Positions 1 to 57,937 of a stretch of 64,000 nucleotides of DNA are shown here, one piece after another. The notes beneath the pieces are model-generated. The model was not told where the DNA came from and did no database searches. It was given only the letters and a program-made list of their open reading frames with translations. A program made the position numbers and the translations under genes. The stretch is from Macrostomum lignano (lineage: Eukaryota), in NCBI GenBank assembly GCA_002269645.1, contig NIVC01002793.1:1-64000 (forward strand). The letters are read 5' to 3'. The number at the start of each line of letters is the position of its first letter. The first letter of the stretch is position 1.

Positions 1-3000
1 TATGGAGGATGACCACAGGACCGACGTGGTGAAGATTGTGCAGAATTTCCACACCAGCATTCGACTGCTGTCAGAAAAGTTTTGACGGAGATGGGACGTA
101 AAGACATACGCTGACGCCCACCTCCTATTTAGAGCTTATCCTCAGCTTCGAGGCCTCATCAATGTCCAAACAGGAGGAAACGATGCGCCAAAAGCGGCGC
201 TACGTCAATGGTCTGGACAAGCTGGCCTTCGCTGTGTGAGCAAGTGAAGGACATGCAGGAGAAGCTGGAGGCTCTGCAGCCGCAGCTGGCTGCAGGCCAG
301 CGCTGAGAACATTGAGCTTATGAAAGTTATCGAGCACGAATCGGTTTGTAGTTGCCGAGCAGGAGGACAAGGTGACCAAGGAGGAGGCGATGGTTAACGA
401 GAAGCGGGCCTCCTCGCGTGCGTTAAAGGATGAATGCGAAGCGGACCTGGCTGAGGCCCTGCCAGCTCTTGAGGCCGCCCTGGAGGCGCTGAATACCCCT
501 GAAGCCCAGTGATATCACCATCGTGAAAACGATGCAGAATTCCTCCGAAGGCGTAAAGATCGTGATGGCCGCCGTGTGCGTAATGCCGCAGGTGCCGCCC
601 GACAAGATTCAAGACCCGGCAGGCGGACCCAAAAAGGTGCTCGATTACTGGGGCCCGTCCAAGAAGCTGATCAACGACATGAATTTCCTGAATTATCTGA
701 AAGAGTATGACAAAGACAACATACCCGTCGCGGTTGATGACAAAGATCCGCAAGGAGTACATACCAAATCCCGAGTTCGAGCCCAGCAAGGTGTCACGTG
801 CATCGTCCGCAGCTGAAGGTCTGTGCAAGTGGATCCTCGCCATGGAGGTCTACGATCGCGTCGCCAAGGTGGTGGCCCCGAAGAAGGCCAAGCTGGCCGA
901 GGCCGAGTCTGAGCTGAAGAGCAACATGGAGATTCTGGCGCAGAAGCAGGGCGAGTTGCGCGCCGTGCAGGACAAGCTGGCCCAGCTGAAGCAGCGGCTG
1001 GAGACGCGCAGAATGAGAAGGCGCGCCTAGAGATGGAGGTCGATCTCTGCGCCAAGAAGCTGGACAGAGCCAAGAAGCTCATCGGCGGCCTTGGAGGGGA
1101 GAAGGACCGCTGGATCAGGCGGCCAAGAACCTGCAGAGCATCTACGACAACCTGCTTGGCGATGTGCTCATATCCGCAGGTGTTATTGCCTACCTGGGCC
1201 CATTCACCATGATCTACAGGTCCCAGACCACAACGAGTGGGTGAAGCTGTGCAAAGAAAAGAATATTCCCTGTTCGGATAATTTCTCCCTGACCGTCTGT
1301 CTGGGTGATCCCGTGCAGATCCAGGCCTGGAACATTGCCGGCCTGCCGAGAGACGCGTTCTCCATTGACAATTCGGTCATTGTGTCCAACTCAGGCGCTG
1401 GTGAGTGCTAAGCAATCGATTGTAATATACCATTTTGAATCTCGACAGTGCAAAGACGCACAAATTCGTTGGTTTTTTGCGTAAAAGCGTTGCTTCGATG
1501 GGATGCCGCAACTCCCCCAGTCCATCGATGGGATTCCGCAACTCCCCCAGTCCATCGATGGGATTCCGCAACTCCCCCAGTCCATCGATGGGATGCCGCA
1601 ACTCCCCCAGTCCATTGATGGGATTCCGCAACTCCCCCAGTCCATCGATGGGATGCCGCAACTCCCCCAGTCCATCGATGGGATTCCGCAACTCCCCCAG
1701 TCCATCGATGGGATTCCGCAACTCCCCCAGTCCATCGATGGGATGCCGCAACTCCCCCAGTCCATCGATGGGATGCCGCAACTCCCCCAGTCCATTGATG
1801 GGATTCCGCAACTCCCCCAGTCCATCGATGGGATTCCGCAACTCCCCAGTCCATTGATGGGATTCCGCAACTCCCCCAGTCCATCGATGGGATTCCGCAA
1901 CTCCCCCAGTCCATCGATGGGATGCCGCAACTCCCCCAGTCCATCGATGGGATGCCGCAACTCCCCAGTCCATCGATGGGATTCCGCAACTCCCCCATTC
2001 CATCGATGGGATTCCGCAACTCCCCCAGTCCATCGATGGGATGCCGCAACTCCCCCAGTCCATTGATGGGATTCCGCAACTCCCCCAGTCCATCGATGGG
2101 ATGCCGCAACTCCGCCAGTCCATCGATGGGATTCCGCAACTCCCCCAGTCCATCGATGGGATTCCGCAACTCCCCCAGTCCATCGAAGGGATGCCGCAAC
2201 TCCCCCAGTCCATCGATGGGATTCCGCAACTCCCCCAGTCCATCGATGGGATGCCGCAACTCCCCCAGTCCATCGATGGGATGCCGCAACTCCCCCAGTC
2301 CATTGATGGGATTCCGCAACTCCCCCAGTCCATCGATGGGATTCCGCAACTCCCCCAGTCCATTGATGGGATTCCGCAACTCCCCCAGTCCATCGATGGG
2401 ATGCCGCTACTCCCTGGTCTTCACCAAAGGAACTCAGTTGATTCTGCTGTCACGTGATTTAACGTAAGCTTACTATCGACACGTTTAGGCCGCTCATGAT
2501 CGATCCGCAAGGCCAGGCCAACAAGTGGATCAAGAACACATACAAGTCGACGCCAGGCTTCGCCGTGATCAAACTGAGCGACTCGAACTACATGCGCCAG
2601 ATGGAGATGGCCATCAGCTACGGCAACCCGCTGCTACTAGAGAATGTCGGAGAGGAGCTGGACCCCAGCCTGGAACCGGTGCTGCTCAAGCAGACGTTCA
2701 AGCAGAGTGAGTTTAGACACAATATTTCAGTAGGTTTTCTGCACTGCCTCGCGACAGTTCAAAGAACCGGCTTTTGTTTATTGAAGCTACAGGCACGATA
2801 GCTGAGACAAACCACCATTGTCTTTGATAATATAGTAATATCTAATTTTTGCTAATTAAAAACAAAACAGTAGCAAACCATATAATGCATGACAATATAT
2901 CTATTGGTAATGTCAGGAATGCATGTCTCTCATAATCATAACAGCATTACTAATCATTGAAAATAACAAACTTATCGAATATTTCAGCTAGAGGACAGAG

Positions 3001-6000
3001 TAAGACGATCATTTTTCCAGTTATAACAACAGATAGAATTATATTTGGTTACCATGCGAACAAAACCGTGTCACCTTAGTTTTGTTTAGTTCAATTTTTT
3101 CGAGTCGGCAATTCACAAACAGTTTGTGTGTGACTAGAGTTACGTATGTACGAGCATATACTGCATATATTGATTGAATACACCCAGCGGGCCACTCTAT
3201 AAGAAAAACTGTTCCCACAATAAAACTGAGCCAAGCACAAAGCGAATTATTCGTAGAATACCAAAGCTAATTTAATCTCGGCAAAAAATATTAGACGAAT
3301 CTCGAGCCAGCAGCGGCAGCCGGTACGACATCTCAGCGTCAGCCTCCAGCCTGACTCGCGGCCTCGGTGAGCTCGCATGTCGGCTCTACAAAAAGTACAT
3401 AATAACCAGCTGCACGGCTGCACGATGAGGCCGTCTGTCTGCGCATCCGGTGCATGAGCGGTGCATGAGCAGCTTCTTTGGTCCGCATGTGTTCGGTCTT
3501 GCATCTGCATGATTCCACTGGCGACAGATAATATAAACTACTAAATAAACTATCATAATTTATAATGCATGGAGTCGGGATAGAGGGCTGTGTCACCGAG
3601 CTGAGGATCGGATAGGGGCTGTGTCATCGAGCTGAGGGATCGGGATAGAGGGCTGTGTCACCGAGCTGAGGGATCGGGATGGATAGAGGGCTGTGTCACC
3701 GAGCTGAGGGATCGAGATAGAGGGCTGTGTCACCGAGCCGAAGGATCGAGATAGAGGGCTTTGAGAATTCCACCAAGGCACGATTCCTTAAGTTTGGCAT
3801 GTGAAGACTATTGGAGATTGAGTGTAAAAGTTTTGTGCACTCGTTCATCCCTTGAAATTCCATTTTCACAGAAGTCACTCACCTTTAATATTGAATTATT
3901 TCTTTTAGAGCAAAATATATTTTTTCATCGTTAATTTCATAGCTTTGCTTTGGAACGCACAGGAATGAGGAACATTTATTGCAGTTAGTTATACTCTAAA
4001 AATGATCGAATCCCTCTAGGTGGAGTCGACATGATCCGTCTGGGCGAAACCACCATCGAATACTCGAAAGATTTCAAGTTCTTCATCACCACAAAGCTGA
4101 GGAACCCGCACTACCTACCGGAGATCGCCGTGAAGGTGTCCCTTCTGAACTTCATGATCACGCCGGAGGGTCTGGAGGACCAGCTGCTTGGCATCGTGGT
4201 TGCTAAGGAGAAGTGAGTGGTGGTTTAGACACACCTGTTTTAGCTAGCTATGGCTGATTACTGTGAATTCTACTATCAGTAGGCTCAAACGCATTTTCCA
4301 ATTCAAATCAATCCCGCTAGGCCGGACCTGGAGGAGGAGCGGCAGTCGCTGATTAAGATGACTGCGCAGAACCGGCGCCAGCTGAAAGAGATCGAGGACA
4401 AGATTCTGGCCACTCTGGCCGAGGCCGAAGGCAACATCCTGGAGAACGAGAGCGCCATCCAGATTCTCGACTCTTCCAAGATCTTGTCCGACGACATTCA
4501 GAAGAAGCAGAAGGTGAGGCGGTGCTTTCAAGCATGTACACTTGTACTATGTCGCTAGCCTAGTGGCCTAGCGCATTCGCCACCACCACTACTGCAAAGG
4601 TTAAACAGAGTTGGTTACGGTTAGCATGCAGCTGAATAGCACGTTTAAGATGGCCCTAAATCTTAAACTTATCTGCGGAAGTCTAGAAGTTAAGAAATTG
4701 CTAATCAATACATTATATTAGTGATAAAATCAGCACAAGTCCTATGTCGCTAGTGAATTTTTATACTAACTGCACATTTGATATTTAATTTAGGTGGCAG
4801 AGAAAACTCAAGAGAAAATTGATGCGGCCCGCATGGACTACGCGCCAATTGCGAACCACTCATCGATACTGTTCTTCTCGATCACGGATCTGCCTAACAT
4901 TGATCCGATGTACCAGTACTCGCTGATCTGGTTTGTCAACCTTTATATCAGCTCCATCAATGAAAGGTGAGAATATTGGTGATTTTATTGCCTCCTTTGA
5001 AGCTCCTCCTTTCCTCACACAATATTGGCTAGAGAGTTCTAGTCTACAAACGTGATGCTGATTGGCTGGAAAAATGATGCCTAGTCGTTTTCTACCTCTC
5101 ATGGGCACCCACCTCACTCCACTCAAGCTGATTGGCTGTCAGATCAGTCAACTTCTCTCACGCGATGCCTATCATGTATATTTCAGTGCTTTAGTATTAC
5201 TACGAGTATCATACATCATGCATAACTTATATTTAATTTTATCGTTTGCATCACTTTTGCCCAAATGCACGCGTCACTGAAAGATGCATAAATTTAACTC
5301 ACAATATGTAATAAAGTCGTGCATTCAATCCATCACGAAGTTAAAACAATTAGTTAAAATAATTTTCAGCAACAAGTCAAAGATTCTGGAGCGCCGCATT
5401 CGCTACCTGAAGGACCATTTTCAGTACAATCTGTACGAGAATGTGTGCCGCTCCCTGTTCGCCAAGGACAAGCTGCTTTTCTCATTAAAGCTCTGCACCA
5501 ATTTAGTGATGTGAGATCGAGTTCATAATCCCAGCTCGTAGATATGGATTATGATGACGAAAGCTCTGAGGCCGAATCGATTTCGGCAATATGATTGCGG
5601 TCCCGCTAATCTAGCATTGATTGATTTTATTATTATTAATAACAATTAACCACGGCTATTAATCAATAATTATGTATATAATATACGCTTACTAACAGTG
5701 ATTAATTTGCTATTTAACTAACTATTAGTAGCTTAGTAGCGCCAGCCCGCCTGGCCAACGCTTTCCACCGTCATTTCAGTAACAAGAGCCGCATTCTGGA
5801 GAAGCGAATCCGCTATCTGATTGAGCACTTCACCATATCGCTCTATACTAATGTCTGTCGGTCGCTATTTGCCACCGATAAGCTGCTATTCTCATTCCTA
5901 ATGACCACCCAGCTCATGTCGTAAGTTCAGCCCCAACCCCCGGTCTAATGAAGCTTGGCAAGCTAATTTAGACTATTTTGAAATACTTCTTCTTCTTCTT

Positions 6001-9000
6001 CCGAGTTAAAATAGTTCTGTCTCTTCGCTGCTCCAGCCACTGTCCATGCTATACTTATCCAACCTGCCACTATAACACTGCGCTGTGAGGACTAATCTGA
6101 GCTTTTGTTGCTCTTTTTTGTTATTTTTAATTGGATGTTTTGTTAAGCACATTACCGATTGCAGTGCTTCATGTCACCTACCGGTACAGTTGTTTTGCAA
6201 TCAAATTTATCGGCTAGTTTGTATAAAACACTTTATATCACAATTGCCTAAGTTTTGTAAACAAAAAATATTCACAGTCTATATAATGCTCTATTGTAAG
6301 TAGTATACTTCAAGCACTTTGGTAGAGAGATTGAAAAAGCAAGAAAATCAGAGCTTGATTCACACAATCACGCAATCAATATGGTTGATTCACTAGTACC
6401 AGAACAGTTGGAACTGCTCTAGTCATCGCCATTGCTCAAAACCCATTTTGCAGTGCTCGAGGCGAACTTGACGAGAAGGAGCTGCTGTTCCTCCTCACTG
6501 GCGGAGTCGGACTGGAGAACAAGCTGCCCAATCCGGACCCGTCCTGGCTGTCCGAAAAGAGCTGGGACGAAATCTGCCGCATGTCTGACCTGCCCGCGTT
6601 CAAGGGATTCAGGTGAGAACGGGTGAACCCGGGTAACTCCGTGCAGGTGTATGCTGATCACTCAGGTATAGCTGGAAACAGGTGTGCTGATCACTCAGGT
6701 ATAGCTGGAAACAGGTGTGCTGATCACTCAGGTATAGCTGGAAACAGGTGTGCTGATCACTCAGGTATAGCTGGAAACAGGTGTGCTGATCACTCAGGTA
6801 TAGCTGGAAACAGGTGTGCTGATCACTCAGGTATAGCTGGAAACAGGTGTGCTGATCACTCAGGTATAGCTGGAAACAGGTGTGCTGATCACTCAGGTAT
6901 AGCTGGAAACAGGTGTGCTGATCACTCAGGTATAGCTGGAAACAGGTGTTCCTGGAGCGTATCTTCAGGTAATCCAACGAAGATCTTTACCTATGGAATC
7001 GGGGCAGCTGGTCAAAATCCGGTGTGCAAGGCCTGGAGAGCACACAGCCACTTCTGTTAATTTTCCAGGCAACACTTCTGCGACCACATCTCCGAATGGA
7101 AGCAGTTCTACGAGAGCAAAGATCCGCACGAGGCGACCCTGCCCGACCCGTGGCACACCAAGCTGGACGAGTTCAAGCGCATCATCGTGGTCCGCTGCAT
7201 CCGGCCGGACAAGATCATCCCAATGGTGACGCAGTACGTCAGAGAGAAACTCGGCCCAAAATTCGTGGAGCCGCCGCCGTTCGATCTGAGCCGCTCCTAT
7301 CAGGACTCGCGCCGCGACGTGCCGATGATTTTTGTGCTGTCGCCGGGCGCGGATCCCACCATGGCGCTGCTGAAATTCGTGGACGACATGGGCTTCAGCG
7401 GTAACAAGTTCGATTCGATCTCGCTCGGCCAGGGCCAGGGACCCATCGCGGCCAGGAAGATTGAGAAGGCCATGGAGGACGGCAGCTGGATCATGCTGCA
7501 GAACTGTCACCTGGCCGTCAGCTGGATGGGCGAGCTGGAGAAGATCTGCGAGGAGTGGCTGGCCAGGGAGAACACGCATCAGGACTTCCGCCTGTGGCTC
7601 ACCAGCTACCCGAGTCCGAAGTTCCCAGTCACGGTGCTGCAGAACGGCGTCAAGATGACCAACGAGCCACCGACCGGCCTGCGGCAGAATCTGCTGCAGT
7701 CGTACCTCAACGATCCAATCTCTGACCCATCATTCTTCAACGGCTGCCCCGGCAAAGAGGCCACGTTCGAGAAGCTGCTGTACAGCCTCTGCTTCTTCCA
7801 CGCGCTGGTGCAGGAGCGCCGGAAGTTCGGCCCGATGGGCTGGAACATCCCCTACGGCTTCAACGACTCTGACTTGAGCATCTCCGTGCGCCAACTGCGC
7901 ATGTTCGTCAACGAGTACGAGCAGGTGCCCTACGACGCCATCACCTACCTGACTGGCGAGTGCAACTATGGCGGCCGCGTCACCGACGACCGCGACAGGC
8001 GCTGCCTCATGACGATCCTGGCCGACTTCTACAACCCTGGCGTGGTCACCGAGCAGAAGTACAAGCTGAGCCCATCCGGCAACTACTACATCCCCAACAA
8101 GATGGACTACGCCGACTACCTGGAGTTCATCAAGAAGCTGCCGGCCTACCAGCACCCGGAGGTGTTCGGTATGCACGAGAATGTTGACATCAGCCGGGAG
8201 CTGCAGGAGACGCGCGGCCTGTTCGACTCGGTGCTGCTCACCCTCGGTCAGGCGGGATCGAGCAAGGCCGGCCAGAGCGACTCCTACCTGAACGAGATCG
8301 CCACCGACATTCTGAAGAAGCTACCGCCAAACTTTGACCTCGAGGCGGCGGTTCGCAAGTTCCCGGTGGTGTACACGGAGAGCATGAACACCGTGCTCAC
8401 CCAGGAGATGGAGCGATTCAACAAGCTGGTTGGCACGGTCCGCTCCTCGCTGCAGTCCCTGGAGAAGGCCATCAAGGGTCTGGTGGTGATGAACGCCGAC
8501 CTCGAGGCCCTCGGCGGCAGCCTGGCGGTGGGCAAGGTGCCGGCCCTGTGGATGCGCGCCTCCTACCCGAGCCTCAAGCCGCTGGGCAGCTACATCAACG
8601 ACCTGCTGGAGCGCCTAAAGTTCCTCAAGAAGTGGTACGACGAGGACAAGCCGGCGGTGTTTTGGATCTCTGGCTTCTTCTTCACGCAGGCCTTCCTGAC
8701 GGGTGTGACGCAGAACTACGCTAGGAAGTACACCATCCCCATCGACTTGCTCGGCTTCGACTTCCAGGTGCTGGCCGTGGACAGCATGTCCACCGCGCCG
8801 AAGGATGGCGCCTACGTTATTGGACTGTACCTGGACGGGGCCAGGTGGGATCGAGACAGGTGAGTCCGAGATGCTAGTAGATTTTAATGGCCATAAAAAA
8901 GAAAGTAGCTGCAGATTATAACAAAAATAAATCAAATATTTTAGTAACTGCTTCTATCACAAAATTTTAGTCTGTTGCAATAAGTAAACTCTGCAAAAAA

Positions 9001-10729
9001 GTTTAGGATCTTCTACAACCGGGGTCCGGGATTAGAACTCCAAACTCAAAGGCCAGGACTGCTTTTCTGAGTCTTTACTCTTCGTCAGCTGGTCTTCACC
9101 TATAAATACACTTGTTTGAAGTTCTGTGCGCTTGATATTTGCCCAAAATATAAAATATTGGCTTCTTTCGTACTTCGTACTTCGAGCTACTCTTTAGTAG
9201 GCGATACCTAATACAGTTCTCTAGCAGCAACCGGATTTTTGTAATAATAATCTAGGATTAAACTTCAGCTTATACCCATAGATAGTACTTACTAGTAGTT
9301 TAGCGATCAAGTAGACAAAAAAAGTTGAGATAGAAGCATATAAAGATGACGTCAAAAATAAGTTGCTTACAATATATTATAGATGGATTATATGTTACAG
9401 TACTCGCTCCCATCTCCCTCGTGTATTTTTACTGCACGGATTGTTCTCGTCCTTAAATAGTCTATGGTAAAACCCCATTGAATACTGTGCGCTTAAAAAT
9501 CTTTCCAGAGAATTTTTTAGACCAACTGTCCACACTACACTGTCTATGGTCCAAACCCCTTAGTCCAGCTTTTTACACTGTCTATGGTCCCGACCCCCCC
9601 CCCCTCAGTCCAGCTTTTTACACTGTCTATGGTCCCGATCCCTCACTCTAGCTTTTTACACTGTCTATGGTCCCGACCCCTCCTCAGTCCAGCTTTTTAC
9701 ATTGTCTATGGTCCCGATCCCTCACTCTAGCCTTTTACACTATCTATGGTCCCGACCCCTTAGTCCAGCTTTTTACACTGTCTATGGTCCCGATCCCTCA
9801 GTCCAGCTTTTTACACTGTCTATGGTCCCGATCCCTCAGTCCAGCTTTTTTACACTGTCTATGGTCCCGATCCCTCACTCTAGCTTTTTACACTGTCTAT
9901 GGTCCCGACCCCTCCTCAGTCCAGCTTTTTACATTGTCTATGGTCCCGATCCCTCACTCTAGCCTTTTACACTATCTATGGTCCATACCCCTTAGTCCAG
10001 CTTTTTACACTGTCTATGGTCCCGATCCCTCAGTCCAGCTTTTTTACACTGTCTATGGTCCCGATCCCTCACTCTAGCTTTTTACACTGTCTATGGTCCC
10101 GATCCCTCAGTCCAGCTTTTTTACACTGTCTATGGTCCCGATCCCTCAATCTAGCTTTTTACACTGTCTATGGTCCCGACCCCTCCTCAGTCCAGCTTTT
10201 TACATTGTCTATGGTCCCGATCCCTCACTCTAGCCTTTTACACTATCTATGGTCCATACCCCTTAGTCCAGCTTTTTACACTGTCTATGGTCCCGATCCC
10301 TCAGTCCAGCTTTTTACACTGTCTATGGTCCCGATCCCCAGTCCAGCTTTTTTACACTGTCTATGGTCCCGATCCCTCACTCTAGCTTTTTACACTGTCT
10401 ATGGTCCCGATCCCTCACTCTAGCTTTTTACACTATCTATGGTCCCGACCCTTCTAATTCAATTCAGAAATTGCCTAGCCGAGCAGCTGCCAAAGATTCT
10501 GTACGATCACGTGCCAGTAATCTGGCTTCGACCGATGAAACGAGAAGAGATTGACGAGAATTCAAATCGGTACACCTGCCCGGTATACAAGACCTCCGAG
10601 AGGCGAGGCGTTTTGTCCACCACAGGTCACAGCACCAACTTTGTGCTGCCAATCCTGCTCAACTGCACCGAGAAGCCGTCGCACTGGGTGAAGCGAGGCT
10701 GCGCTCTGCTTTGCCAGCTCGATGATTAA
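1..10729 (+). CDS. DNAH12: Axonemal inner-arm dynein heavy chain, C-terminal part (stalk/MTBD, AAA5, strut, AAA6, C-terminal domain); 5' end lies outside the window. Exons: <1-1400, 2489-2706, 4020-4212, 4321-4513, 4794-4966, 5370-5510 or 5780-5920, 6454-6612, 7069-8859, 10468-10729
   Basis: Spliced translation gives [82 protein letters not shown] and ends ALLCQLDD*. All junctions are GT-AG and in phase. C-terminus and AAA6 wording match DNAH12 as I recall it. The first 1.4 kb carries several 1-bp frameshifts. Confidence 0.88.
1495..2414. repeat. 30-bp minisatellite (~30 copies) in a dynein intron
   Basis: Unit TCGATGGGAT(G/T)CCGCAACTCCCCCAGTCCA repeated head-to-tail with no spacers; a few 1-bp C-run deletions. 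Confidence 0.97.
3575..3760. repeat. ~32-36-bp minisatellite (5-6 copies) in a dynein intron
   Basis: Unit GGGATAGAGGGCTGTGTCACCGAGCTGAGGATC with small variants. Confidence 0.9.
5370..5510 (+). CDS. Dynein alternative exon A (141 nt, phase 2-2)
   Basis: ttttcag|C AAC AAG TCA...GTG AT|gtgag; encodes [46 protein letters not shown]. Confidence 0.85.
5780..5920 (+). CDS. Dynein alternative exon B (141 nt, phase 2-2), paralogue of exon A
   Basis: atttcag|T AAC AAG AGC...ATG TC|gtaagt; encodes [46 protein letters not shown]. Missed by the ORF track because it has no start codon. Confidence 0.85.
6644..6949. repeat. 33-bp minisatellite (~9 copies) in a dynein intron
   Basis: Unit CAGGTGTGCTGATCACTCAGGTATAGCTGGAAA, near-perfect copies. 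Confidence 0.97.
9536..10452. repeat. ~37-41-bp minisatellite with higher-order structure in the last dynein intron
   Basis: Core TTTTTACACTGTCTATGGTCCCGA followed by alternating variants (CCCCTCCTCAGTCCAGC, TCCCTCACTCTAGC, CCCCTTAGTCCAGC); ends ~15 bp before the acceptor at 10467. Confidence 0.95.
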
Positions 10730-11529
10730 TACCGCGCTGTCACGTGACTGTAGCTTATATCAAACCGTGTAAAAGTACTTAATATTTTGTTGACTTTCAC
10801 CACAAAAACTATTTCTATTTTGGCTGCCTGCAAGTTGGTTTTTTAACTATCGAGAGAGGATTGACTATATGCCAGCTCCTACGATGTGAGTTTTATATAG
10901 CTTATATGTTTTGAGATTTTTTGAGATTCTGATTCCTACAGATTGGACCAGGCCATGTTGCTTGTTGGTTGTATAATAAAAAATAAAAGAAAATACTATA
11001 CGAAGACAATTGAATTTTTCCAAAGATTACAGAAAAAACTCGATTATAACAAAGAACATTAATTGACAAGCAACAGGTTTCCCTGAAAACTGCCCATAAA
11101 CTTAAGTGTTTTAATAATCTTAATTTACCTTATTACCATTTTTTCAAAGATAAACAACTTTGCTTCACAAAATCTGTTCAAAATATTCTGCCTAGCCTAC
11201 TCGAAGAATAGGCTACTCGAAGTTGGCCGATCGGGACGACATATTTCAAATTTTAAATATACACTCGTATAAAAAATTTCTTAAGCGATTTTTGTACGAT
11301 TCACGAAGCGTTTCTACTTTATTAAACTGGTGTTGAAGAAGCCAAGTCTGTTCGGCTGTGGAATCTCCATTGACAAAGAGAGGAAAAGGAGAGAGAAAAA
11401 TACAGAACCCTTCAGAAACTTGACTCTTCACAAGCTCGAAAATTTAAATCTCCACAAAAGTTGACCCTTGGTTTTTAATTTGATGAGTAATTCTACTTTT
11501 GAGATTTAGCTCTGTGACTTTCATGCGTT

Positions 11530-12010: not shown

Positions 12011-12840
12011 ACTGATGCAGCACAGCTCGCCAAGCATCCCAGCAGCAGCGGTGCAACCCCAAACGAGTTAATCCAGCGAAGTTCAGCAGCTGCGGTACAC
12101 TATGCAGAGTCTGCAGGCATCGGTGAGCACAAAATTCCCAGTTGCAGCAGCTAGCAGCCTGCAGAGTGAGAACAAGCATCACGACAAGACCGCATTGCCA
12201 GAGATTGCTACGGCAGGCGACAGCGGGAAACGCCAGAGGCTGGGGTGTGCGGGCCCGCAGCAACCCCGGCCTGCAGTAACTGCGGGCCCAGCAGCGCCGG
12301 CTTCAACGCCAGCCCTCATAGTCTTCAACGGGTGCAGCGTCGCGCCCGAAAGACTATCGCAGTGTGAGTGCAATCTTGATGACAGGATTGTGTAGGCGTT
12401 GAAGGCGCGACACCGGAAGCCAGCACTTTTGTAGACCGTGTCTACTGCGGAAGAAAGATTGAAGCCCCGAAAGAGCCAGTCGCTTCTATATATTTAGCAA
12501 GCACCGTACGCAAGCAACAAAGAACCTCGAGGGTCTCTCATACATGTACGCAAAGCAAAAGGGGCAAAAGGAAAAGGAAGGAACGAACAAGCAAGCAATG
12601 GGTGACGCATCGCGACAAAGAACAATCCTACCCCACTTCCCCTCAACCCCTCTCACACAACACAACTACACTGTACGTCATCACAAGCACTCACTAGTTG
12701 AGTCCAGCATCATGACAAAATCTCAGCTCAGACAGACAACCACAGCCAGAGTGCAACTTCATTCAGTGAACAAGCAGCCAATTAGCATAGAATTGCCACT
12801 CAATCAGCTCGGCAATTTTTTCGTTTTGTCAGGTTTGGTA

Positions 12841-15800
12841 TTGACTTAGCTCGTACTTTGACTCAGCCGCCAAGTAAGTGTCCATAGACACAGCGGGGAG
12901 GCGAGGGTCGCCCATTCCGCTAGCCCCTGAAGGCGTCTCGTCGTCTTGTCGCCAGAAGGAACTGGATGAGCCGTGGGATGCCCGAACCGACGGGTTCGGC
13001 CCGAGGTAGCGTAGCCGGTCTCTGGTAAAGAAAAGGCAGTGACAAACAAAGTGCTGAGCAACTTCATTGTCGTATTCGCAAAAAGGGCAAAGTTCACTCG
13101 GTCGCCTCGGAGGACGCAGTGCCTGGCGAGGTAGCCATGGCCGGTAAGGGTCATGACGAGGGTGCGAATATCCTTCCCATTTTGGTTCAGAGGATGTTCC
13201 TGAGTCTGCGTGTGAGAGGTGCACGGAATCGCAGCATGTGATGACTAACAGTCTGGGAGCCCACCTATCTGTCCCTGTGAAGGGAATCGGCCCAGGCATC
13301 GATCTGACGATTGATGATCGAGGGGCTGCGGGTCTAGTAAGGAGCCAGAGCAACCCTCTTGGCGAGGGTGATTCTCCGGAAACCCTGCGTGACCTGGGAT
13401 CCACTTCAGCCCGATAGTATTGCTACTGGCCAGGAGGTTGAGCTGCCGGGCGCAGTCAGCGAATGTCCGGGAGTTCGTAGTGGTGTAGCAAAGGTCCTGT
13501 AAGGACGCTTGGCTGTCAGAGTCTGCTCTGATCTAGATCTAGAGTCTGGTCTGGTCTGATCTGGTCTGGTCAGAGTCTGATCTATCTGGAAGATCATGGA
13601 GAGTCTGCCAGTGTGCTGGGCATGCGTGGCAATGACGCGACTGTTCATTATGATGCAGACCCAAAAGCCGGCGTAGCCGTCTTTGATGGATCTGTCCGTG
13701 TAATAGTGGACCTCTTGGAAATTCCAGTAGTCAGTGGCAGCACCCCTTGAGGGAATGGTGACCTTGTGGCGCTGAAAGAGAGTGCGGGTCCACCGTCAGA
13801 TAAGACGTGGAGCCCGCCGCCGTCTCTCAAGTCTTTGAGGCAGAGGTCGGTGTGAGGCAGGAGCTTGCGCTTTGCCATGGCGCTATGGGGCAGGAAACGA
13901 ATGCCAGCGTCAATCAGACCGCGGGCAGTCTAAGCAGCTTCACTGCGGACGAATATGTCCAGCGGGGGTGTTGAGGAAGGCGTTGAGGCCATCGTAAGGA
14001 GAAGACGGGGGCGCTCATGATCATGCGGCATGCGCGCCCTTGCGCTCTTCATCTGCAGGGCGCTAGCCCAGATCAGGCCGCCGTACAAGATTGCAGGCCT
14101 AACCATTACAGTGTAGATCCACCAGAGGCGCTTGGGGTGAGCCCCCAGGTGGTGCCGACGGCCCTGCTCAGCTGCGTGAGAACTGCGAGGGCCCTCTTGG
14201 CTTTTGTCTGAATGTGAGGTGACCAGTTCAGCCTGAGGTTTAGGGTAATCCCAAAACATTTAGTCTGCTTGCAGAAGGGGATTTCTCGTAAAGCGTGAGC
14301 GGCCGAATTTGCCACGTTGTCCTACTGGTGAACATGATCGCTGCGGTCTTAGTCTCAGAGAGTTTTAGACCGCAACGATCCACCCATTGCTCAGGGGCGC
14401 AAATGAAATTCTGGAGGAAGTCCCTGAGGGTGTCAGGGGACGGACCAGATGCCAACGCGGCGACATCGTCCGCATATCCTACTTTCAGGCCGAGTCAGGC
14501 CGAGTATCCGGAAGGAGCTCATCGATGACCATATTCCATAGAACTGGAGTCAGCATCCCACCTTGCGGGCTATCTTTGCAGACGAGGACCGTCCTCTGGT
14601 AGCCCAGCAAACTGGCAGTGGCCGTGCGATGGCTGATAATGTACATATTCCACCTGGTGAGATGCCGAGTGCGTTTTCCTCTCACAGAGGGCTCTCAGGA
14701 ACGCCTCGAAGGGAACGTTATCAAAGGCGCCGATGATATCAAGGAAGATCCCCAGAGTGAAGCCGTTTCCAAGCATAGCCTTCTCACGTTTACCGTCCAG
14801 GACGTGCAGCGCGCTTTCGGTGGAGCGACCCTCCCGAAAAGCGTGCTGGTTCTCGCTGAGAGGCTTGTTCTTCAGCTCCACAGAGAGAAGGCGCCAAAGC
14901 ACCAGTCTCTCCATCAGCTTGACCAGGGAGGAGGTCAGGCTGATCGGTCTGAAGGATTTGATAGAATGGTAGTCATGGTAGGCCTGGCTTAGGGATGAAA
15001 ATCACCTTTGCCACGGTCCAAGCCCGTGGGACGCATCCAAGCGTGATGCATGCCCGTAAAAGGCTGCAAAGTTTACGCAGGAAGCCTGGGCATTTAACCG
15101 CCCCTCTTAGGAGAAGCAGGTACAATACCGTTAGGTCCTGGAGCTTTGACGAGCTTGAATGAGGTAGCTGCTTTAACGATGCGGTTCTTCGTGATGATAG
15201 AGGCAGCGAGCGCGTGACCTCCCTCAGAGTGATCCGGGGTGGTCGGTTAGCCGGCTCGTTAGGGAAAAACTCAGAAAGAATTATATCAAGCGTTTCCCGT
15301 GGGTTATCCGTGGACGTGCCGGCGTTCTGAGGCTTACTTTTGAGGGTCCAGGGTTCCCAGACGAGGATGAGCCCCGGCATGTCGAACTCGGCATAACGCA
15401 TAATGTTGACAGAGGCTGTGACGCAGTGCTGCAGATTGATCTGAAAACACCGGAGTCCCTGGCTGCTGATCATTTTCACAGTTGGGGAATCGTGGAGCAG
15501 GTCATCCTCCTTTTCAGAGCTGGTTGGCCCGCAGACCTCCAATGCGAGTTTCAGCGTCCTCGGCAGTCAGGGTGGCTGTGGAGTCCTCCCCGGGCGTGAG
15601 CCCAGCGTGGACGTAACCGTCGCCTCCCCTACGTGCTTCGGTGCTGTCACTACCCAGACCCTCCGCCTCGTTGGTCAGGTCGATGCGGGTGACGCCAGCC
15701 TTCTAGTGAGTGACAGCCTCGAACCAGTCAGTCAGCGCCTCCCCGCTTTCAGCCCGACCTTCTGGCTGTTGGGAGCGCGAGAAGTGCGGACCCGTTCAAG

Positions 15801-17596: not shown

Positions 17597-20500
17597 ATGG
17601 ACATGGAGACCAAACTCGTATTCTACGTTAATCAGATGAAGGTAAGCTTGGATTGAAAACTTTCTGCTGGATGGCCAATACTAATAGTTAGTGATAGTGA
17701 CAGCTTTAGTGCCAGGGCCGCCTAATTGAGTGCTAGGGGCGCCTAATTGATTTGTCACGACGCGCCTAATTGAGGGTCAAGGGCGCCTAATTAAGTGTTA
17801 GGTGGCATCTAACTGAGCGTCAGGGGTGCCTAATTGAGTGCCAAGGGCGCCTAATTGATAGTCAGGTGTGCCTAACTGAGTGTCAGGATAGGAGCTGCCA
17901 CTGTCTTGTACTCTTAGTTTTAGGGTCTGCGACAGCTACTCGCAGCCCCCCACCTGTTGTTATCGCTCGCTCTTTGAAGCGCCTCTATCTCGCGTTATCT
18001 CTCACTCAACTGTTAACCCCTAACCCATTATATAGCTCACTTGCGTACTGTAGGCTTGCAACCAGAGCTCATGAATTTATCGAACAAGCGCATCTTGCTC
18101 AAAATGTTCTTTTACGTTTTTCTTCGTTTTCAGTGCACTATAATTTGAGAATTCAACCTACAGTAACCCTAGAAACGATTTTATGTACTGTTATCAATTA
18201 CTTAGATAATTTAGTCACTGTGAAGACTCTAAAAAAAGAAACCAGGCATTGTGATAGCGTCATAATACTACTGTATGTTTTTGAAAAGTAGTACGAGCTA
18301 GCACTAAAATATTCTAATTATATATTTCCAGATCGTAGAACCCACACCGGACCCGGAAGAGACACTAATCTCGTATCTGAGGCGAAAATGTAATAACACT
18401 TGCTATTTTTGCTTGTTACTTATAAAAGTACACGGGCCCTTTCAATTGAACTGTAGATAATTCTACCAATACTCTATGTCCCAACACAGGCTAAACCCCT
18501 TTACACCAAATCGCTTTTCAGTACACATTGCCTTCATTCCCCCTCACAGCTCTATACATCCACCCGTCCGCAATGTACATTGCCATTCTAATCTCACAGC
18601 TCTACACCCATCCGTCTCCGTACACTATAAGTAGACCCGCCCACGCTTCGCCCCCAGTGCATCTCACCGGCACAAAGCTCGCCTGCGGAGAGGGCGGCTG
18701 CGGCGCCTGCACCGTGATGATCTCTCGATGGGACCGGCGGGCCGACTCGCCGCTGCACCTCGCCGTCAACGCCTGTCTGGCGCCCCTCTGCTCGGTGCAC
18801 GGCGCCTCCGTCACCACTATCGAAGGCATCGGGCGAAGCGGGGCGCTGCACGCTGTGCAGGAGCGCCTGGCCAGGGCGCACGGCTCCCAGTGCGGCTTCT
18901 GCACGCCCGGCGTCCTGATGTCCGCCTACAGCCTGCTGCGAGAGCGGCCACATCCTACAGACGCCGAGCTGACGGCCAGTCTTCAGGGCAACCTGTGCCG
19001 CTGTACCGGCTATCGGCCCATACTGGACGGCCTGAGGTCTCTGTGTTGCGGTGGCGGCGGCGACAGCAGCGGTTGCTGCGGCGGCGGCCGAGGCTCCTCC
19101 GGATGCTGCATGGATGCAAAGGGCTCCGGGGTGGCAACGGAGTTGTTTGACACGACCGACCTGCTGCCTTACGATCCCGGCCAGGAGCCGCTGTTCCCCA
19201 GCGAGCTGCAGGTTGTTCGATTTCGAACCGGGATTGAAAGCTGTGCATTTGTTCTGGAATTTAGTTTAATCAAATCGCCAATTTTAATTCATCTAGCTGA
19301 CGGACCGGTACGACGCCAGTGAGCTACGCTTCACCTCCGATCGGGTCACGTGGCATCGGCCAGTCAGCCTGGAGCGGCTTCTGCAGCTCAAATCTGAGCA
19401 CCCCGAGGCTAAGCTGGTTGTGGGAAATAGCGAGATTGGTGAGTTTTGGTTCACAGATCATGAATGCTTGCCAGTAGGATTACTGGTAGTTGGAATCTTG
19501 TAATTAGTACCGATAATATCAGTGGGTATCGTGTCAACAGTATCAAAATCTGTGGCTATCTTGTCAGTTGCACCAATATATGTGGCTTTCTTGTCAGTAG
19601 TACCAATATCATATCTGTAGAATGAATTTCAGTATCTTAGATAAATGCAATGCACCTCACCGAATGAACCATGCCCAGGCATCGAGACCAAGCAGAAGGG
19701 CGCCATTCATCCGCATCTAATTTGCACTTCCGGCGTGCCTGAGCTGACGTCAATCGAGGCGACACCCGCCGGCTTTGTGATTGGCGCCAGCGTAAGCCTA
19801 ACACGCCTGGCGCAGCTGTGCCGGCGCCTGTGCTCGGACGCCAAGGCCGGCGGGCTGTCCTTGGAGCACCAGAAGCGCGGCTGCCGGGCCCTGCTGGACA
19901 TGCTGGACCAGTTTGCCGGGCCGCAGATCCGCAACGTTGCGGTAATTGAGAGGGCTGTGGAACCAGCTCAAACTGCGAGTTAGCAGGGTAGCTCAGCGAT
20001 TAACGCGTTTGACGCGTTCGAAGTAGTTAGGCTCGATTCTGTGCGCAGCCACATGTAATTTGGGGCTCGAGCCCAACATGAATTAGGCTGTGATGCTTGT
20101 GCAGTTCTCGCCCATGAGGGCATCAGGGAATGTACTAAAGTAAATGGAAAAGCTTAGGGGTCAACGAAACGGGCAAGACTGCTTGACTCTTTGGTCTCTG
20201 TGAGTCGACTGTCGGCCTGATTCGCCTTCATCTGGAAACTGACCGACTTTTGCTTTTTCTGCAGGCAATCGGCGGCAATGTGATGACAGCCAGCCCGATC
20301 TCGGACCTGATTCCTCTTCTCGGAGCTCTAGGAGCCACCTTGACGCTGGCGTCGCTGCGTGAGTCTGAGCTGTTGTCTAAGCCATCTCTACGAGAACATG
20401 CACCGTTTCATTAAACCACATCATGTTCATAAACCGCAGAGCCCCATGACAACCCATAAGGACCCTTGCTTTGCCCGCAGGCGGAGAGCGCAACGTGGCA

Positions 20501-52059: not shown

Positions 52060-53300
52060 ACTCTTTGTAACAAGCAGCTCGTCCATGACTAAATTCCAGA
52101 GGATCGGGCTGAGTACTCCACCTCCGCCTTTCTAGACTTACACAGAGCGCGAGTGTCCCAGGAGGTGGCAGTACGATGGGAGACCATGTACATGATCCAG
52201 CGAGTGAGGTGCTCGTGCGTGCGCCGGGATTCCAGGGCCCGCTTAAAGGCTTCAAAGAGCACATTATTAAAAGCACCACCATCAATGTCGAGGAAAAGCG
52301 ACAGCGCGTATCCACTGCCAAGTACGGCGCGCCCCAGCTTGTCGACAATTGCGTGCAGCGCACTTTCGATGGAGCGTCCAGGACGAAAGGCGTGCTGATT
52401 AGGGGAGAGCGGGGAGTTCCTCAGCTCTACGAGGAGAAGGCGCCAGAGCACCAGCCGTTCCATCAGTTTGAGGAAGAAAGACGTCAGACTGATAGGGCGG
52501 TAAGCTTTAGCAGAGTGATAGTCTCCCTTCCCTGGCTTGGATATGAAGACTACCGTAGCCTCTTGCCAGGCTTTTGGCACGTACCCGAGGGTAATGCTGG
52601 CCTTGAAGAGGTTGCAGAGGGGGCCGAGAAACCTGTCATTTTTAACTGCCTCATGAAGGAAGGCAGGATAAATGTTGTCAGGACCCGGAGACTTGAAAGG
52701 AGAGAAGGATTTTGCGGCGCGAGCCGTCCTTTCTCTAGTGATGATGGTCGAAGCCAGGATCTGTCCGCCCGGAGAGTGGTCCGGTGGGCCTAGCTGCGGT
52801 GCGGCACGTGGGAAAGAGCTGGTGAGCATAATGTCCAGCGATTCCCCAGGGTTCTCAGCGAGCCGGCCGTCCGGTCTTTTAATGACTGAGAGCTTTGACA
52901 TTTTGTCGAGGGTGAGAGCCTTAACTACGCGCGAAGTAGGGCGGGTGCCTTCTAACTCCGCGCAGTATTGGCGCCATTTGTCGGACTTGGCTTTCCTGGC
53001 TTCACGCTTAAAGTCGCGGATCGCTTCTTGGTAGGCGGCCAGGTCAGCTGGGTCCTTGCTCTTGCGAGCTTTCCGTTGGAGGCACTTTGCCTTGCGCCGG
53101 AGGGATCCAAGCGCCGGGTGCCACCAGGGGGCCAGAGGTACCTGATACGTACAGGTTCACTACCGGGCGAAGCCCGTACCCAACTTGGCCAACAGGCCAC
53201 GGATGGGTTGCCGCCGCCGGAGCCCAGTCAGTCCAGCAGCCCTAGAGCTGCCTTGAACACATGCGGGGCGTGAATCCCTGGGTCGGCTTGTGAGTCAGTA
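52060..53300 (-). mobile_element. LOA/R1-like copy E3: 5' UTR fused to the ORF2 linker and RT N-terminal half, 3'-truncated
   Basis: 53300-53150 aligns with the E1 5' UTR; then APWWHPALGSLRRKA, KSPGPDNIYP, YRPISLTSF, NQHAFRPGRS, GGVLSPILWNLVMDELL. Confidence 0.88.
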
Positions 53301-55782: not shown

Positions 55783-56283
55783 TCAAGCGTCTCTCTCTAC
55801 CCCCATATCTTTCAAAAGTCTTCCCATTTGTTTGTTAGGAGCGCACAAAATAAACCCCGCTCCTGAGCCTCCGCCCTCTCTCCTCGTGCACCAGCCCTCT
55901 CTCCCTGTGCACCCGCCCTCGCCTTCAACCCCGAACCCCAACTTTGTTTTACTAAAAATAACAGCTTTAACTAGCTTCCGAGCGATCGACTCACGAAATC
56001 CGCTTGAAGCCCCTATATTGTCTAGTCTCTTAAGCATTTCTTTGTCCCAGCGATTCTTCTCCTCAGGAAAATCTCTATATTTAACATCGTGCCACATGCA
56101 GACAGAGTCTAGCTCGTTCACAGGCTCATGCCCAGGATTTGGATTATCGTTTGTATCTAACTGTATTTCAAGTGGATTCAAAGGCCCGCAATATTTATAG
56201 CCGGGAAGTGTCCAGCCTTTGTTTGGATGAGGAAGCTTTTCTATCAGTCCATGTGAATCTAACTTACCACCAGAGTGTTGCAT
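55783..56283 (-). CDS. Parvovirus-type phospholipase A2 domain protein
   Basis: LPGYKYCGPLNPL (Ca-loop-like) ... PVNELDSVCMWHDVKY (catalytic HDxxY). Confidence 0.85.
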   Translation of the reverse strand: MQHSGGKLDSHGLIEKLPHPNKGWTLPGYKYCGPLNPLEIQLDTNDNPNPGHEPVNELDSVCMWHDVKYRDFPEEKNRWDKEMLKRLDNIGASSGFRESIARKLVKAVIFSKTKLGFGVEGEGGCTGREGWCTRREGGGSGAGFILCAPNKQMGRLLKDMGVERDA

Positions 56284-56312
56284 ATTTTTATTTTAAATTT
56301 TATTTAAAAAAA

Positions 56313-57350: not shown

Positions 57351-57366
57351 AATATTAAAATAAAAA

Positions 57367-57720: not shown

Positions 57721-57937
57721 TGATTGTGAGCATGAAAATTCTGTAAGCAAGTCTGACATTGTCAAAGCCATCATGACACTGCACAATGCTGGGTTTACAA
57801 TAATGCGCATGTGATGAGGTTTAAAACCCCACTTTATCCAGCTTCATAAACCTAACGCTACTTATAGGATGTAGAAACAGTTCAACTTTTCTATCAGGGT
57901 GGTCACCCTCAAAATTTTTTTTATTTTAGAGAAAAAA

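What the first reader, a model, noticed from the sequence alone, without database searches (positions are those of the whole stretch)
5370..5920. Tandem duplicated 141-nt exons: candidate mutually exclusive splicing in a DNAH12 motor domain
Two exons have identical length, identical phase (2-2) and intact splice sites, share 31/46 amino acids and differ heavily at synonymous sites, which points to an old duplication under purifying selection. They encode the helical segment after the strut, before AAA6. Either exon alone gives the normal protein; both together would duplicate the segment. The 269-nt intervening intron is too long for simple steric exclusion, so a regulated mechanism is implied, possibly giving cilia-type or sperm-specific dynein isoforms. 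Exon B is invisible in the ORF track.
Basis: partly seen in the sequence, partly recalled or inferred. Interest (0 to 1): 0.72.

Follow-up and report, generated by a model that had tools for sequence, protein, structure and literature searches.

The report
Ancient either/or exon pair in dynein
Two neighbouring 141-base exons in the inner-arm dynein gene (DNAH12) of the flatworm Macrostomum lignano are a real, old pair of alternatives that tapeworms, ribbon worms and molluscs also carry and are annotated as using one at a time; this gives two versions of one small helical part of the motor, which is a tidy example of a known kind of splicing rather than something new.

Summary
Exon A (5370-5510) and exon B (5780-5920) are both 141 nt, in the same phase, with intact AG/GT sites. 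They share 31/46 whole codons, with dN/dS 0.21 and dS 1.8.

The window is not from an insect. It is Macrostomum lignano: 99.5% identical to GCA_002269645.1, and the protein matches PAA47942.1. The gene is the DNAH12 orthologue.

The pair is ancient. The layout upstream exon, "Q-type" exon (= A), "T-type" exon (= B), downstream exon, each alternative 141 nt, is also found in a tapeworm, a ribbon worm and an oyster. Amphioxus, a coral and a starfish have only the T-type exon.

In more than 15 mollusc species, a ribbon worm and a tapeworm, annotated equal-length isoforms swap exactly this 47-residue segment. A structure model shows it is one helix-turn-helix just after the strut.

In M. lignano, RNA-seq-derived models use A only and ab initio models read through A+B. 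No B-only model exists, so use of B here is inferred from selection and orthologues, not shown.

Steric, U12 and reading-frame explanations for exclusivity are ruled out. No convincing RNA docking/selector pairing was found.

The parts
4794..4966 (+). Constitutive upstream exon (end of the strut plus two AAA5 small-domain helices). It ends with two bases of a split Ser codon; donor AAAG|GTGAGA.
   Evidence: tblastn E 2e-30 to the orthologous exon
4967..5369 (+). Intron 1 (403 nt). It contains a direct repeat GCTGATTGGCTG at 5057 and 5127.
   Evidence: Folding z -0.9. 5 difference events against copy L003.
5370..5510 (+). Alternative exon A, 141 nt, the 'Q-type' (derived) copy. It encodes [46 protein letters not shown]. 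This is the exon used in the RNA-seq-derived gene models.
   Evidence: 38/46 identical to the Lineus Q exon and 39/46 to Cichlidogyrus. No differences among the M. lignano copies.
5511..5779 (+). Intron 2 (269 nt) between the alternatives. It has a branch-point-like TACTAAC at 5690-5696. There are no differences in the copies L002 and L003. It folds better than shuffles, with its 5' splice site pairing to the pyrimidine tract before exon B.
   Evidence: longest difference-free run is 5349-5783; MFE -64.5 kcal/mol, z -2.46, 2/200 shuffles
5780..5920 (+). Alternative exon B, 141 nt, the 'T-type' (ancestral-like) copy. It encodes [46 protein letters not shown]. It is absent from the A-only models and read through in the ab initio models.
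   Evidence: The only two differences among the M. lignano copies are synonymous (5783, 5897).
5921..6453 (+). Intron 3 (533 nt)
   Evidence: 13 difference events against L003; folding z +0.47
6454..6612 (+). Constitutive downstream exon ([17 protein letters not shown]...). It starts with the third base of the split codon.
2489..10729 (+). 3' part of the DNAH12-orthologue gene. Exons: 2489-2706, 4020-4212, 4321-4513, 4794-4966, [A|B], 6454-6612, 7069-8859, 10468-10726 plus TAA. The 1043-residue reading frame is open with either exon.
   Evidence: (AAA_9, Dynein_heavy, AAA_lid_11, Dynein_C)
1..1400 (+). Stalk / microtubule-binding-domain coding region of the same gene. In this window it carries single-base indels that break the frame.
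   Evidence: 17 of the 20 differences from the other assembly L001 in this stretch are 1-base indels, so these are assembly errors.

Best explanation
The two exons are a cluster of two mutually exclusive exons in the Macrostomum lignano orthologue of DNAH12, a single-headed inner-arm axonemal dynein. Each mature mRNA is expected to carry A or B, not both.

The choice swaps one 47-residue helix-turn-helix of the AAA5 small (lid) domain. This element lies directly after the strut/buttress coiled coil, which links the ATPase ring to the microtubule-binding stalk. The result is two motor variants.

The pair arose by tandem exon duplication before flatworms, ribbon worms and molluscs diverged. B is the ancestral-like 'T-type' that every animal outgroup examined has. 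A is the derived 'Q-type', recognisable by K/R14, Q/E18, D/E23 and A31.

Shown: the anatomy, the homology, purifying selection, the conserved architecture in four genomes from three phyla, absence of the pair in three non-spiralian genomes, and exclusive use in annotated isoforms of orthologues.

Inferred: that B is actually spliced in M. lignano, presumably in a minority of ciliated cell types; that the two forms differ in motor properties; and how exclusivity is enforced. Length-, spliceosome- and frame-based mechanisms are excluded. That leaves trans-acting factors or RNA structure in the unusually conserved intron between the two exons.
For: Anatomy and selection:
- Searches give the exon anatomy; dN/dS is 0.21 and neutral simulations reach the observed identity in 0 of 20,000 runs.
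- Among the M. lignano gene copies, exon B differs only at two synonymous third positions, while neighbouring introns differ by about 2.4%.

Gene and organism:
-.

One copy is the norm:
-.

Same layout, 141 + 141 nt, order Q then T, AG/GT intact:
- Lineus L004: 25759-25899 and 26422-26562.
- Spirometra L005: 40858-40998 and 41218-41358.
- Magallana gigas L006: 28488-28628 and 29341-29481.

Single exon in outgroups:
- Amphioxus, Orbicella and Asterias loci have one copy.

Equal-length isoforms that swap only this segment:
- M. gigas XP_065937691 vs XP_065937692.
- Lineus X1/X3 vs X2/X4.
- Liolophura, Haliotis, Gigantopelta, Mytilus, Ostrea, Mya, Physella, Biomphalaria, Pecten, Mizuhopecten.
- Dreissena, with three variants.
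- Spirometra KAL7064912 vs KAL7064913.

Orthology of types:
- Copies from one species never group together in NJ bootstraps, and there are type-specific positions.

Transcript support for A-only:
- The A-only models PAA47942.1, PAA61647.1 and PAA47634.1 come from a StringTie/RNA-seq annotation (PMC5730564).

Structure:
- The segment is helices 263-285 and 288-305 of the P0272 model, with pLDDT about 90.
Against: - No B-only protein model exists for M. lignano. The nine members of its 90% cluster are A-only, A+B or lack the region. However, the GenBank set was filtered, and whether it keeps more than one protein per gene was not checked (my assumption is that it does not), so this is weak evidence.
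- Exon B is more diverged than T-type exons elsewhere: 31/46 to human, and it carries Ala at the otherwise near-invariant Glu31.
- The isoforms in other species are computational RefSeq/GenBank models whose read support I could not inspect. One of them (Saccostrea echinata X3) contains both exons.
- The peptide tree is poorly resolved. The key groupings have 44-66% support, and cestode Q copies do not join the other Q copies.
- No mechanism for exclusivity was found. Intron-intron duplexes are not better than shuffles. The stable fold of intron 2 is not seen in Spirometra (z +1.3) and is weak in Lineus (z -1.45).
Confidence: 0.72

Rival explanations
1. Exon A is constitutive in Macrostomum, and exon B is a silent relic of the ancestral alternative exon that is no longer spliced in.
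For: - Only A-only models come from the RNA-seq-based annotation.
- B is the faster-evolving copy in this lineage and has lost the conserved Glu31.
- Schistosome models likewise show only a Q-like exon.
Against: - B has an open frame, a consensus GTAAGT donor and a pyrimidine-rich acceptor.
- It keeps the family's most conserved residues, in particular the near-invariant core NVCRSLF..DKLLFS.
- A-versus-B dN/dS is 0.21, which cannot be reached if B had drifted neutrally for most of the time since duplication.
- The two B differences among gene copies are both synonymous.
- A very recent loss of use cannot be excluded.
Confidence: 0.17
2. Both exons are spliced in together, giving a dynein with a tandemly duplicated helix-turn-helix, as in the UniProt models A0A1I8J266 and A0A1I8JJN8.
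For: - A+B keeps the reading frame (1090 residues, no stop).
- Two M. lignano models, and several cestode and mollusc models, contain both copies.
Against: - Based on their names and sources rather than any check here, those models appear to be ab initio or 'hypothetical protein' predictions.
- The RNA-seq-derived M. lignano models skip B.
- RefSeq isoforms in many species carry one or the other.
- An extra hairpin would have to fit into a tightly packed AAA5 lid.
Confidence: 0.04
3. The alternatives are not strictly exclusive. B behaves as an optional cassette, or both exons can be skipped, and the aberrant in-frame products are simply rare noise. There is no dedicated exclusivity mechanism.
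For: - All four combinations are in frame.
- No steric, U12 or NMD constraint applies, and no significant docking/selector pairing was found.
- Saccostrea echinata X3 carries both exons, and Mytilus galloprovincialis X8 (47 residues shorter than X3, no copy of the segment found) may lack both.
Against: - Equal-length isoform pairs dominate the annotations.
- Intron 2 is completely conserved among gene copies and folds unusually well in M. lignano. This hints at regulation.
Confidence: 0.07

Closest known systems
The orthologous DNAH12 isoform pairs annotated in RefSeq/GenBank for other Spiralia (e.g. Magallana gigas XP_065937691.1 / XP_065937692.1; Lineus longissimus XP_064633434.1 / XP_064633435.1; Spirometra KAL7064912.1 / KAL7064913.1)
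   Same: It is the same gene, the same 47-residue segment, the same 141-nt exon length and phase, the same order (Q-type then T-type), and the same flanking exons.
   Different: In M. lignano only the Q-type (A) form, or a read-through A+B form, is annotated. Its T-type exon is more diverged. I found no paper describing the pair in any species.
The mutually exclusive exon in the cytoplasmic dynein heavy chain of Schistosoma mansoni (SmDHC1), the test case of Pillmann et al. 2011 (PMC3228551); see also the remark in Kollmar 2016 (PMC5100056) that some DHC genes have alternative splice forms in the motor domain
   Same: Both are tandem homologous exons of identical length with split codons at both ends in a flatworm dynein heavy chain. 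In both cases exclusivity is inferred from the fact that all other dyneins have one copy.
   Different: [quoted passage not shown] No deep conservation across phyla was reported for it.
Arthropod muscle myosin heavy chain (Mhc) clusters of mutually exclusive exons
   Same: The logic is the same: small structural modules of a motor domain are swapped to give isoforms with different mechanochemistry (as summarised in PMC3228551).
   Different: It is a different motor family, with several clusters and up to many variants per cluster. Functional differences have been measured there but not here.
Docking-site / selector RNA competition (Dscam exon 6 type)
   Same: It is a mechanism that enforces one-of-N exon choice when introns are too long for steric exclusion, which is the situation here.
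   Different: No docking/selector pair stands out. The best intron 1 x intron 2 duplex has dG -25.9 kcal/mol, z -1.7. There is no cross-species conservation to test.

Membership tests
Cluster of mutually exclusive exons (criteria of Pillmann et al. 2011, PMC3228551) | Neighbouring internal exons of the same or nearly the same length | tested here: met
   Both are 141 nt, separated by one 269-nt intron.
Cluster of mutually exclusive exons (criteria of Pillmann et al. 2011, PMC3228551) | Conserved splice sites and the same reading-frame phase at both ends | tested here: met
   AG|...|GT at both exons, phase 2-2. Each exon joins the same flanking exons in frame.
Cluster of mutually exclusive exons (criteria of Pillmann et al. 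2011, PMC3228551) | Sequence homology: both exons encode the same structural element | tested here: met
   31/46 residues identical. Both align to the same helix-turn-helix (residues 257-304 of the P0272 model).
Cluster of mutually exclusive exons (criteria of Pillmann et al. 2011, PMC3228551) | Mature transcripts contain exactly one of the exons | tested here: inconclusive
   A-only models are derived from RNA-seq. No B-only model exists in this species. Exclusive use is annotated in orthologues of more than 15 species. No reads were available here.
DNAH12 (single-headed inner-arm axonemal dynein heavy chain) orthologue | Best match to DNAH12 rather than to the paralogues DNAH7, DNAH3, DNAH1 or DNAH6 | tested here: met
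   PDB chains: DNAH12 907 bits, DNAH7 781, DNAH3 734, DNAH1 574. Most named proteins among the 120 best full-length hits are called DNAH12, while some flatworm and mollusc entries carry 'heavy chain 7' names; identity is 64-71%. No reciprocal search or tree was made.
DNAH12 (single-headed inner-arm axonemal dynein heavy chain) orthologue | Dynein motor domain architecture | tested here: met
   AAA_9, Dynein_heavy (D6), AAA_lid_11 and Dynein_C are in the window. The full set of domains is in the M. lignano gene L001.
Exclusivity by steric hindrance | Intron between the alternatives, or the donor-to-branch-point distance, too short for a spliceosome (about 50-60 nt or less) | tested here: not met
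   The intron is 269 nt, and the TACTAAC at 5690-5696 is about 180 nt from the donor. The same intron is 219-712 nt in the other three species.
Exclusivity by U2/U12 spliceosome incompatibility | One U12-type and one U2-type splice site flanking the middle intron | tested here: not met
   All donors are GTGAGA or GTAAGT and all acceptors are YAG with U2-type tracts.
Exclusivity by frame shift and nonsense-mediated decay | Including both exons, or neither, shifts the frame | tested here: not met
   141 = 3 x 47. The A+B (1090 residues) and skip-both (996 residues) products are open.
Exclusivity by competing RNA pairing (docking site / selectors) | A conserved intronic docking sequence complementary to a selector next to each alternative exon | tested here: inconclusive
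   Inverted repeats are 22 nt or shorter at 73-87% complementarity. Best local duplexes have z -1.7, +0.5 and +0.1. The intron 2 self-fold has z -2.46. There is no variation among copies to test covariation.

The most novel reading that the evidence does not exclude
This is the flatworm representative of a Spiralia-wide two-exon switch in the AAA5 lid of DNAH12 that appears to be undescribed in the literature. On my own estimate (not a tool result) it is more than 500 million years old.

Under this reading, the derived Q-type and the ancestral T-type encode functionally distinct inner-arm motors used by different ciliated cell types. Candidates are gliding epidermis, protonephridia and sensory cilia, and in other phyla sperm or larval bands. 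Flatworms have made the derived exon the default. The fully conserved, well-folding intron between the exons, whose 5' splice site pairs with the pyrimidine tract of exon B, is the element that blocks A-to-B splicing.
Probability: 0.3. Interest if true: 0.62.

Novelty: new member of a known kind. Interest (0 to 1): 0.45.

Why it matters
Axonemal dynein diversity is usually explained by gene paralogues (seven or more heavy chains per repeat). Here one inner-arm dynein gene makes two motors by swapping a single helical hairpin next to the strut. That is the element coupling ATP-ring movements to microtubule binding. The switch has been kept across flatworms, ribbon worms and molluscs.

This gives a natural, minimal pair of variants for asking what the AAA5 lid contributes to motor tuning. 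It also gives a marker for cilia-type specialisation in animals that glide, filter and swim with cilia.

There is a practical point as well. The current M. lignano gene models are wrong or incomplete at this site: they are A-only, or an A+B read-through that adds a spurious 47 residues. Several cestode and mollusc models have the same read-through error.

Tried and rejected
1. I first took the window for a mosquito or other dipteran, from its codon usage and repeats. This was rejected. No arthropod appears among the best 120 full-length hits, and the window is 99.5% identical to M. lignano contig NIVC01004282.1.

2. The first protein search returned only fragments of 552 residues or fewer and no close relatives. 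I inferred that hits are limited to about 1.75x the query length. A tripled query timed out (not counted). A 1091-residue query raised the cap to 1903. Padding with 1319 X residues exposed the full-length proteins.

3. An exact look-up of the 558-residue ORF of the large exon found nothing.

4. I considered that the gene might be a pseudogene because of about 10 frameshifts in window 1-1400. This was rejected: they are single-base indels absent from the other assembly, and the rest of the gene is intact.

5. Whole-intron RNAduplex energies were uninformative because the duplexes span the full length (z +0.1, -0.9, +0.7). Windowed duplexes were not significant.

6. The stable fold of intron 2 is not conserved in Spirometra or Lineus.

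7. The NJ tree of 46-residue peptides has too little signal to prove a single origin for all Q-type exons.

8. Literature searches for a description of this pair (Dhc62B, axonemal dynein plus mutually exclusive exons) found nothing specific.

9. I recalled that Macrostomum sperm lack axonemes, which would argue against a sperm-specific isoform here, but I could not verify this in the library.

10. The Schistosoma haematobium locus could not be fetched because the gene exceeds 100 kb. Whether schistosomes still have a T-type exon is therefore unknown.
Full report
**What is in the sequence**

Reading 4800-6700 and checking by script confirms the finding as written.
- Exon A is 5370-5510 and exon B is 5780-5920. 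Both are 141 nt.
- Both are preceded by a YAG acceptor and followed by a GT donor (GTGAGA and GTAAGT).
- Both enter after the two bases 'AG' left by the upstream exon (end 4966). Both leave two bases that are completed by the 'T' at 6454.
- The translations share 31 of 46 whole codons (32/48 with the split codons), but only 84/141 bases.
- Eighteen identical residues use different codons. Differences fall 13/11/30 on codon positions 1/2/3.
- Nei-Gojobori gives dN 0.39, dS 1.84, dN/dS 0.21.
- In 20,000 neutral simulations to the same nucleotide divergence, none reached 32 identical residues (mean 16, maximum 25) and 83% acquired a stop.
- tblastn finds exactly two copies in the first 11 kb.

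**The gene**

I assembled the downstream part of the gene from GT-AG sites and frame continuity. The exons are 2489-2706, 4020-4212, 4321-4513, 4794-4966, A or B, 6454-6612, 7069-8859, and 10468-10726 plus TAA.

This gives an open 1043-residue frame with either exon. The frame also stays open with both exons (1090 residues) or neither (996 residues), because 141 is a multiple of three.

Pfam finds AAA_9, the D6 P-loop domain, AAA_lid_11 and Dynein_C.

Against solved structures, the best match is DNAH12 (8J07 chain g1 and 9FQR chain PW, 907 bits). DNAH7 scores 781, DNAH3 734 and DNAH1 574.

**The organism, and a quirk of the search tool**

The first protein search gave only fragments of 552 residues or fewer at about 50% identity. 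From the sharp cut-off I guessed that hits are limited to about 1.75 times the query length.
- A 1091-residue query moved the limit to 1903.
- A query padded with X residues to 2410 exposed the full-length proteins.

Among these, PAA47942.1 (BOX15_Mlig003862g8, Macrostomum lignano) is identical to the window's protein around the exon pair. Its contig (GCA_002269645.1, NIVC01004282.1; locus L001) matches window 1-11000 at 99.5%.

The window is therefore the free-living flatworm M. lignano, not an insect. No arthropod appears among the 120 best hits. The next-best are molluscs, a ribbon worm, parasitic flatworms, then deuterostomes and cnidarians at 64-71% identity.

**Is one copy the norm?**

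Yes. Nearly all of about 500 homologues contain the segment once. These comprise 120 fragments, 150 cluster representatives, 120 partial proteins and 117 full-length proteins. One exception is P0271 (Schistosoma bovis), whose second copy lies about 540 residues from the first and reflects a large-scale duplication in that model.

The other exceptions are informative. Gene models of Sinanodonta, Biomphalaria, Pomacea, Taenia, Echinococcus, Schistocephalus and two UniProt models of M. lignano itself (A0A1I8J266, A0A1I8JJN8) carry two tandem copies. This is what a gene predictor produces when it reads through a pair of alternative exons.

**The pair is old and is used one exon at a time elsewhere**

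Cluster members show many species with isoforms of identical length that differ only in this 47-residue stretch, with identical flanks:
- Magallana gigas X1 against X2/X4.
- Ostrea edulis, four Mytilus species, Mya, Pecten, Mizuhopecten, Haliotis, Gigantopelta, Physella, Biomphalaria.
- Dreissena, which has three variants.
- The chiton Liolophura.
- The ribbon worm Lineus longissimus (X1/X3 against X2/X4).
- The tapeworm Spirometra (KAL7064912 against KAL7064913, both 2591 residues).

Two types recur.
- The 'T-type' reads ...SDHFTY(N/S)LYCNVCRSLFEKDKLLFSF...
- The 'Q-type' reads ...KDHF(Q/S/E)Y.LY(D/E)NV.RS.FAK(H/D)K...

Window exon A is Q-type. It is 38/46 identical to the Lineus Q exon and 39/46 to the monogenean Cichlidogyrus. 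Exon B is T-type with the flatworm signature EKRIRYLI, and is 33/46 identical to the Spirometra T exon.

At the DNA level the same layout holds in three other genomes: upstream exon, Q (141 nt), T (141 nt), downstream exon, all AG/GT. These are Lineus, Spirometra and the oyster, with middle introns of 522, 219 and 712 nt.

The amphioxus, coral (Orbicella) and starfish (Asterias) loci hold a single T-type exon, and nothing similar sits in the flanking introns. All deuterostome, cnidarian and sponge proteins seen are T-type.

The simplest reading is one tandem duplication in the stem of Spiralia, with T ancestral-like and Q derived.

A bootstrap NJ tree of the 46-residue peptides never pairs the two copies of one species, but it is weakly resolved. 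Support is 66% for mollusc Q, 66% for Mlig A + Cichlidogyrus, and 44% for Mlig B + flatworm T. Cestode Q copies do not join the other Q copies. A single origin is therefore likely but not proven.

**What is known for M. lignano itself**

Three GenBank models (PAA47942.1, PAA61647.1, PAA47634.1) use exon A and skip B. That annotation was built from RNA-seq with StringTie/TACO and a mapped de novo transcriptome (PMC5730564). The junctions 4966>5370 and 5510>6454 therefore have transcript support.

No B-only model exists. I assumed, without checking, that the submitted set holds only one protein per gene; if so, this absence is weak evidence.

Support for B being functional is indirect:
- The dN/dS value above.
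- The intact sites, with a better donor and pyrimidine tract than A.
- Comparison of the assembly's other gene copies: L002 is 99.3% identical and L003 97.5% identical over the 2 kb around the exon pair (window 4700-6700). Exon B differs at only two positions, both synonymous third-position transitions (AAC>AAT, TTC>TTT), while the neighbouring introns carry about 2.4% events.

**Where the segment sits**

I made an AlphaFold model of orthologue P0272 from a 55-sequence alignment (mean pLDDT 84).
- It shows the long antiparallel pair H136-169 / H178-214, which I take to be the strut, followed by two short helices.
- Then come H263-285 and H288-305, with pLDDT about 90. These two helices are exactly the swapped 47 residues.
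- The AAA6 strands start near residue 443.

Seven positions are type-specific: 14, 18, 23, 31, 33, 36 and 43 of the peptide.

**How exclusivity might work**

Three textbook mechanisms are excluded.
- The middle intron is 269 nt, with a TACTAAC about 180 nt from the donor, so there is no steric block.
- All sites are U2-type.
- Every combination of exons is in frame.

For RNA competition I found only weak leads.
- Inverted repeats are short and imperfect.
- The best local duplex between introns 1 and 2 (5053-5082 with 5584-5618) has dG -25.9 kcal/mol and z -1.7, matched by 2 of 25 shuffles. The other intron pairs are at or above the shuffle mean.

Two observations single out intron 2.
- It has no difference at all in the copies L002 and L003. 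The longest difference-free run against L003 is 5349-5783, covering exon A and the whole intron.
- It folds better than shuffles (z -2.46, 2/200). A closing helix pairs the 5' splice site after exon A with the pyrimidine tract before exon B. By comparison, introns 1 and 3 give z -0.9 and +0.5.

The same intron does not fold well in Spirometra (z +1.3) and only mildly in Lineus (z -1.45). I treat this as a lead, not a finding.

**Comparison with what is known, and verdict**

Mutually exclusive exons in dynein heavy-chain motor domains are known in principle. SmDHC1 is the worked example of Pillmann et al. 2011, and Kollmar 2016 notes alternative motor-domain forms. The arthropod myosin heavy chain is the classic case of tuning a motor this way.

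The DNAH12 pair itself is present in automated RefSeq annotations of many molluscs and a ribbon worm. I found no paper describing it.

It is best filed as a new member of a known kind. The added points are its antiquity (Spiralia-wide) and the mis-annotation in M. lignano and several other species. Use of exon B in this animal, its cell-type distribution and the exclusivity mechanism remain to be shown.

Noticed in passing
window 1-1400: The stalk / microtubule-binding-domain coding sequence of the same dynein gene changes frame about 10 times. 17 of the 20 differences from the other M. lignano assembly (L001) in this stretch are single-base indels. The window therefore looks like an unpolished long-read assembly patch, not a decaying gene.
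   Followed up: yes
window 1495-2414, 6652-6949, 9536-10452 (also 3575-3760): There are large minisatellites inside dynein introns: 30-nt unit x 31 copies, 33-nt unit x 9 copies (100% identical), and 38-nt unit x 24 copies. They create long spurious ORFs on both strands.
   Followed up: partly
window 18495-22549 and 42933-46892 (+ strand): Two near-identical copies of a xanthine dehydrogenase / aldehyde oxidase-like gene (CO_deh_flav_C, Ald_Xan_dh_C, MoCoBD_1/2) lie about 24 kb apart. This is a segmental duplication within the window.
   Followed up: partly
window 56085-61782 (+ strand): A run of long ORFs includes an rve-type integrase (56085-57347) and a protein-primed type-B DNA polymerase (DNA_pol_B_2, 58965-60503). 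This combination is typical of Maverick/Polinton-like elements. Only single ORFs were scanned; the element was not assembled or delimited.
   Followed up: partly
window 12832-15566 (-) and 52092-53156 (-): Reverse-transcriptase (RVT_1) ORF fragments are present, probably non-LTR retrotransposon remains.
   Followed up: partly
proteins P0584-P0605 (Ptychodera, Apostichopus, Asterias, Patiria, Anneissia, Antedon): In hemichordates and echinoderms, which have a single T-type exon, annotated isoforms differ immediately after this segment by a short optional insert (e.g. ...NILIAEGEQHADKKEM... against ...NILMDKKEM...). The same exon boundary is therefore an alternative-splicing site in another clade.
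   Followed up: no
proteins P0563, P0417, P0575 (Dreissena polymorpha X1, X2, X3): The zebra mussel has three different versions of the segment in equal-length isoforms. This implies a three-exon cluster (a further duplication of the T-type exon).
   Followed up: no
L002, L003 (M. lignano NIVC01002011.1, NIVC01004384.1) against window 4927: The window copy encodes SLIWF where copy L003 and nearly all other dyneins have SLTWF (ATC against ACC). This is the only non-synonymous difference among the copies in the four exons compared.
   Followed up: partly
tool behaviour: the search for homologous proteins returned no hit longer than about 1.75 times the query (552 for a query of 315, 1903 for 1091). 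Short queries from very long proteins therefore miss all full-length relatives, including the source organism. Padding the query with X residues lifted the limit.
   Followed up: yes
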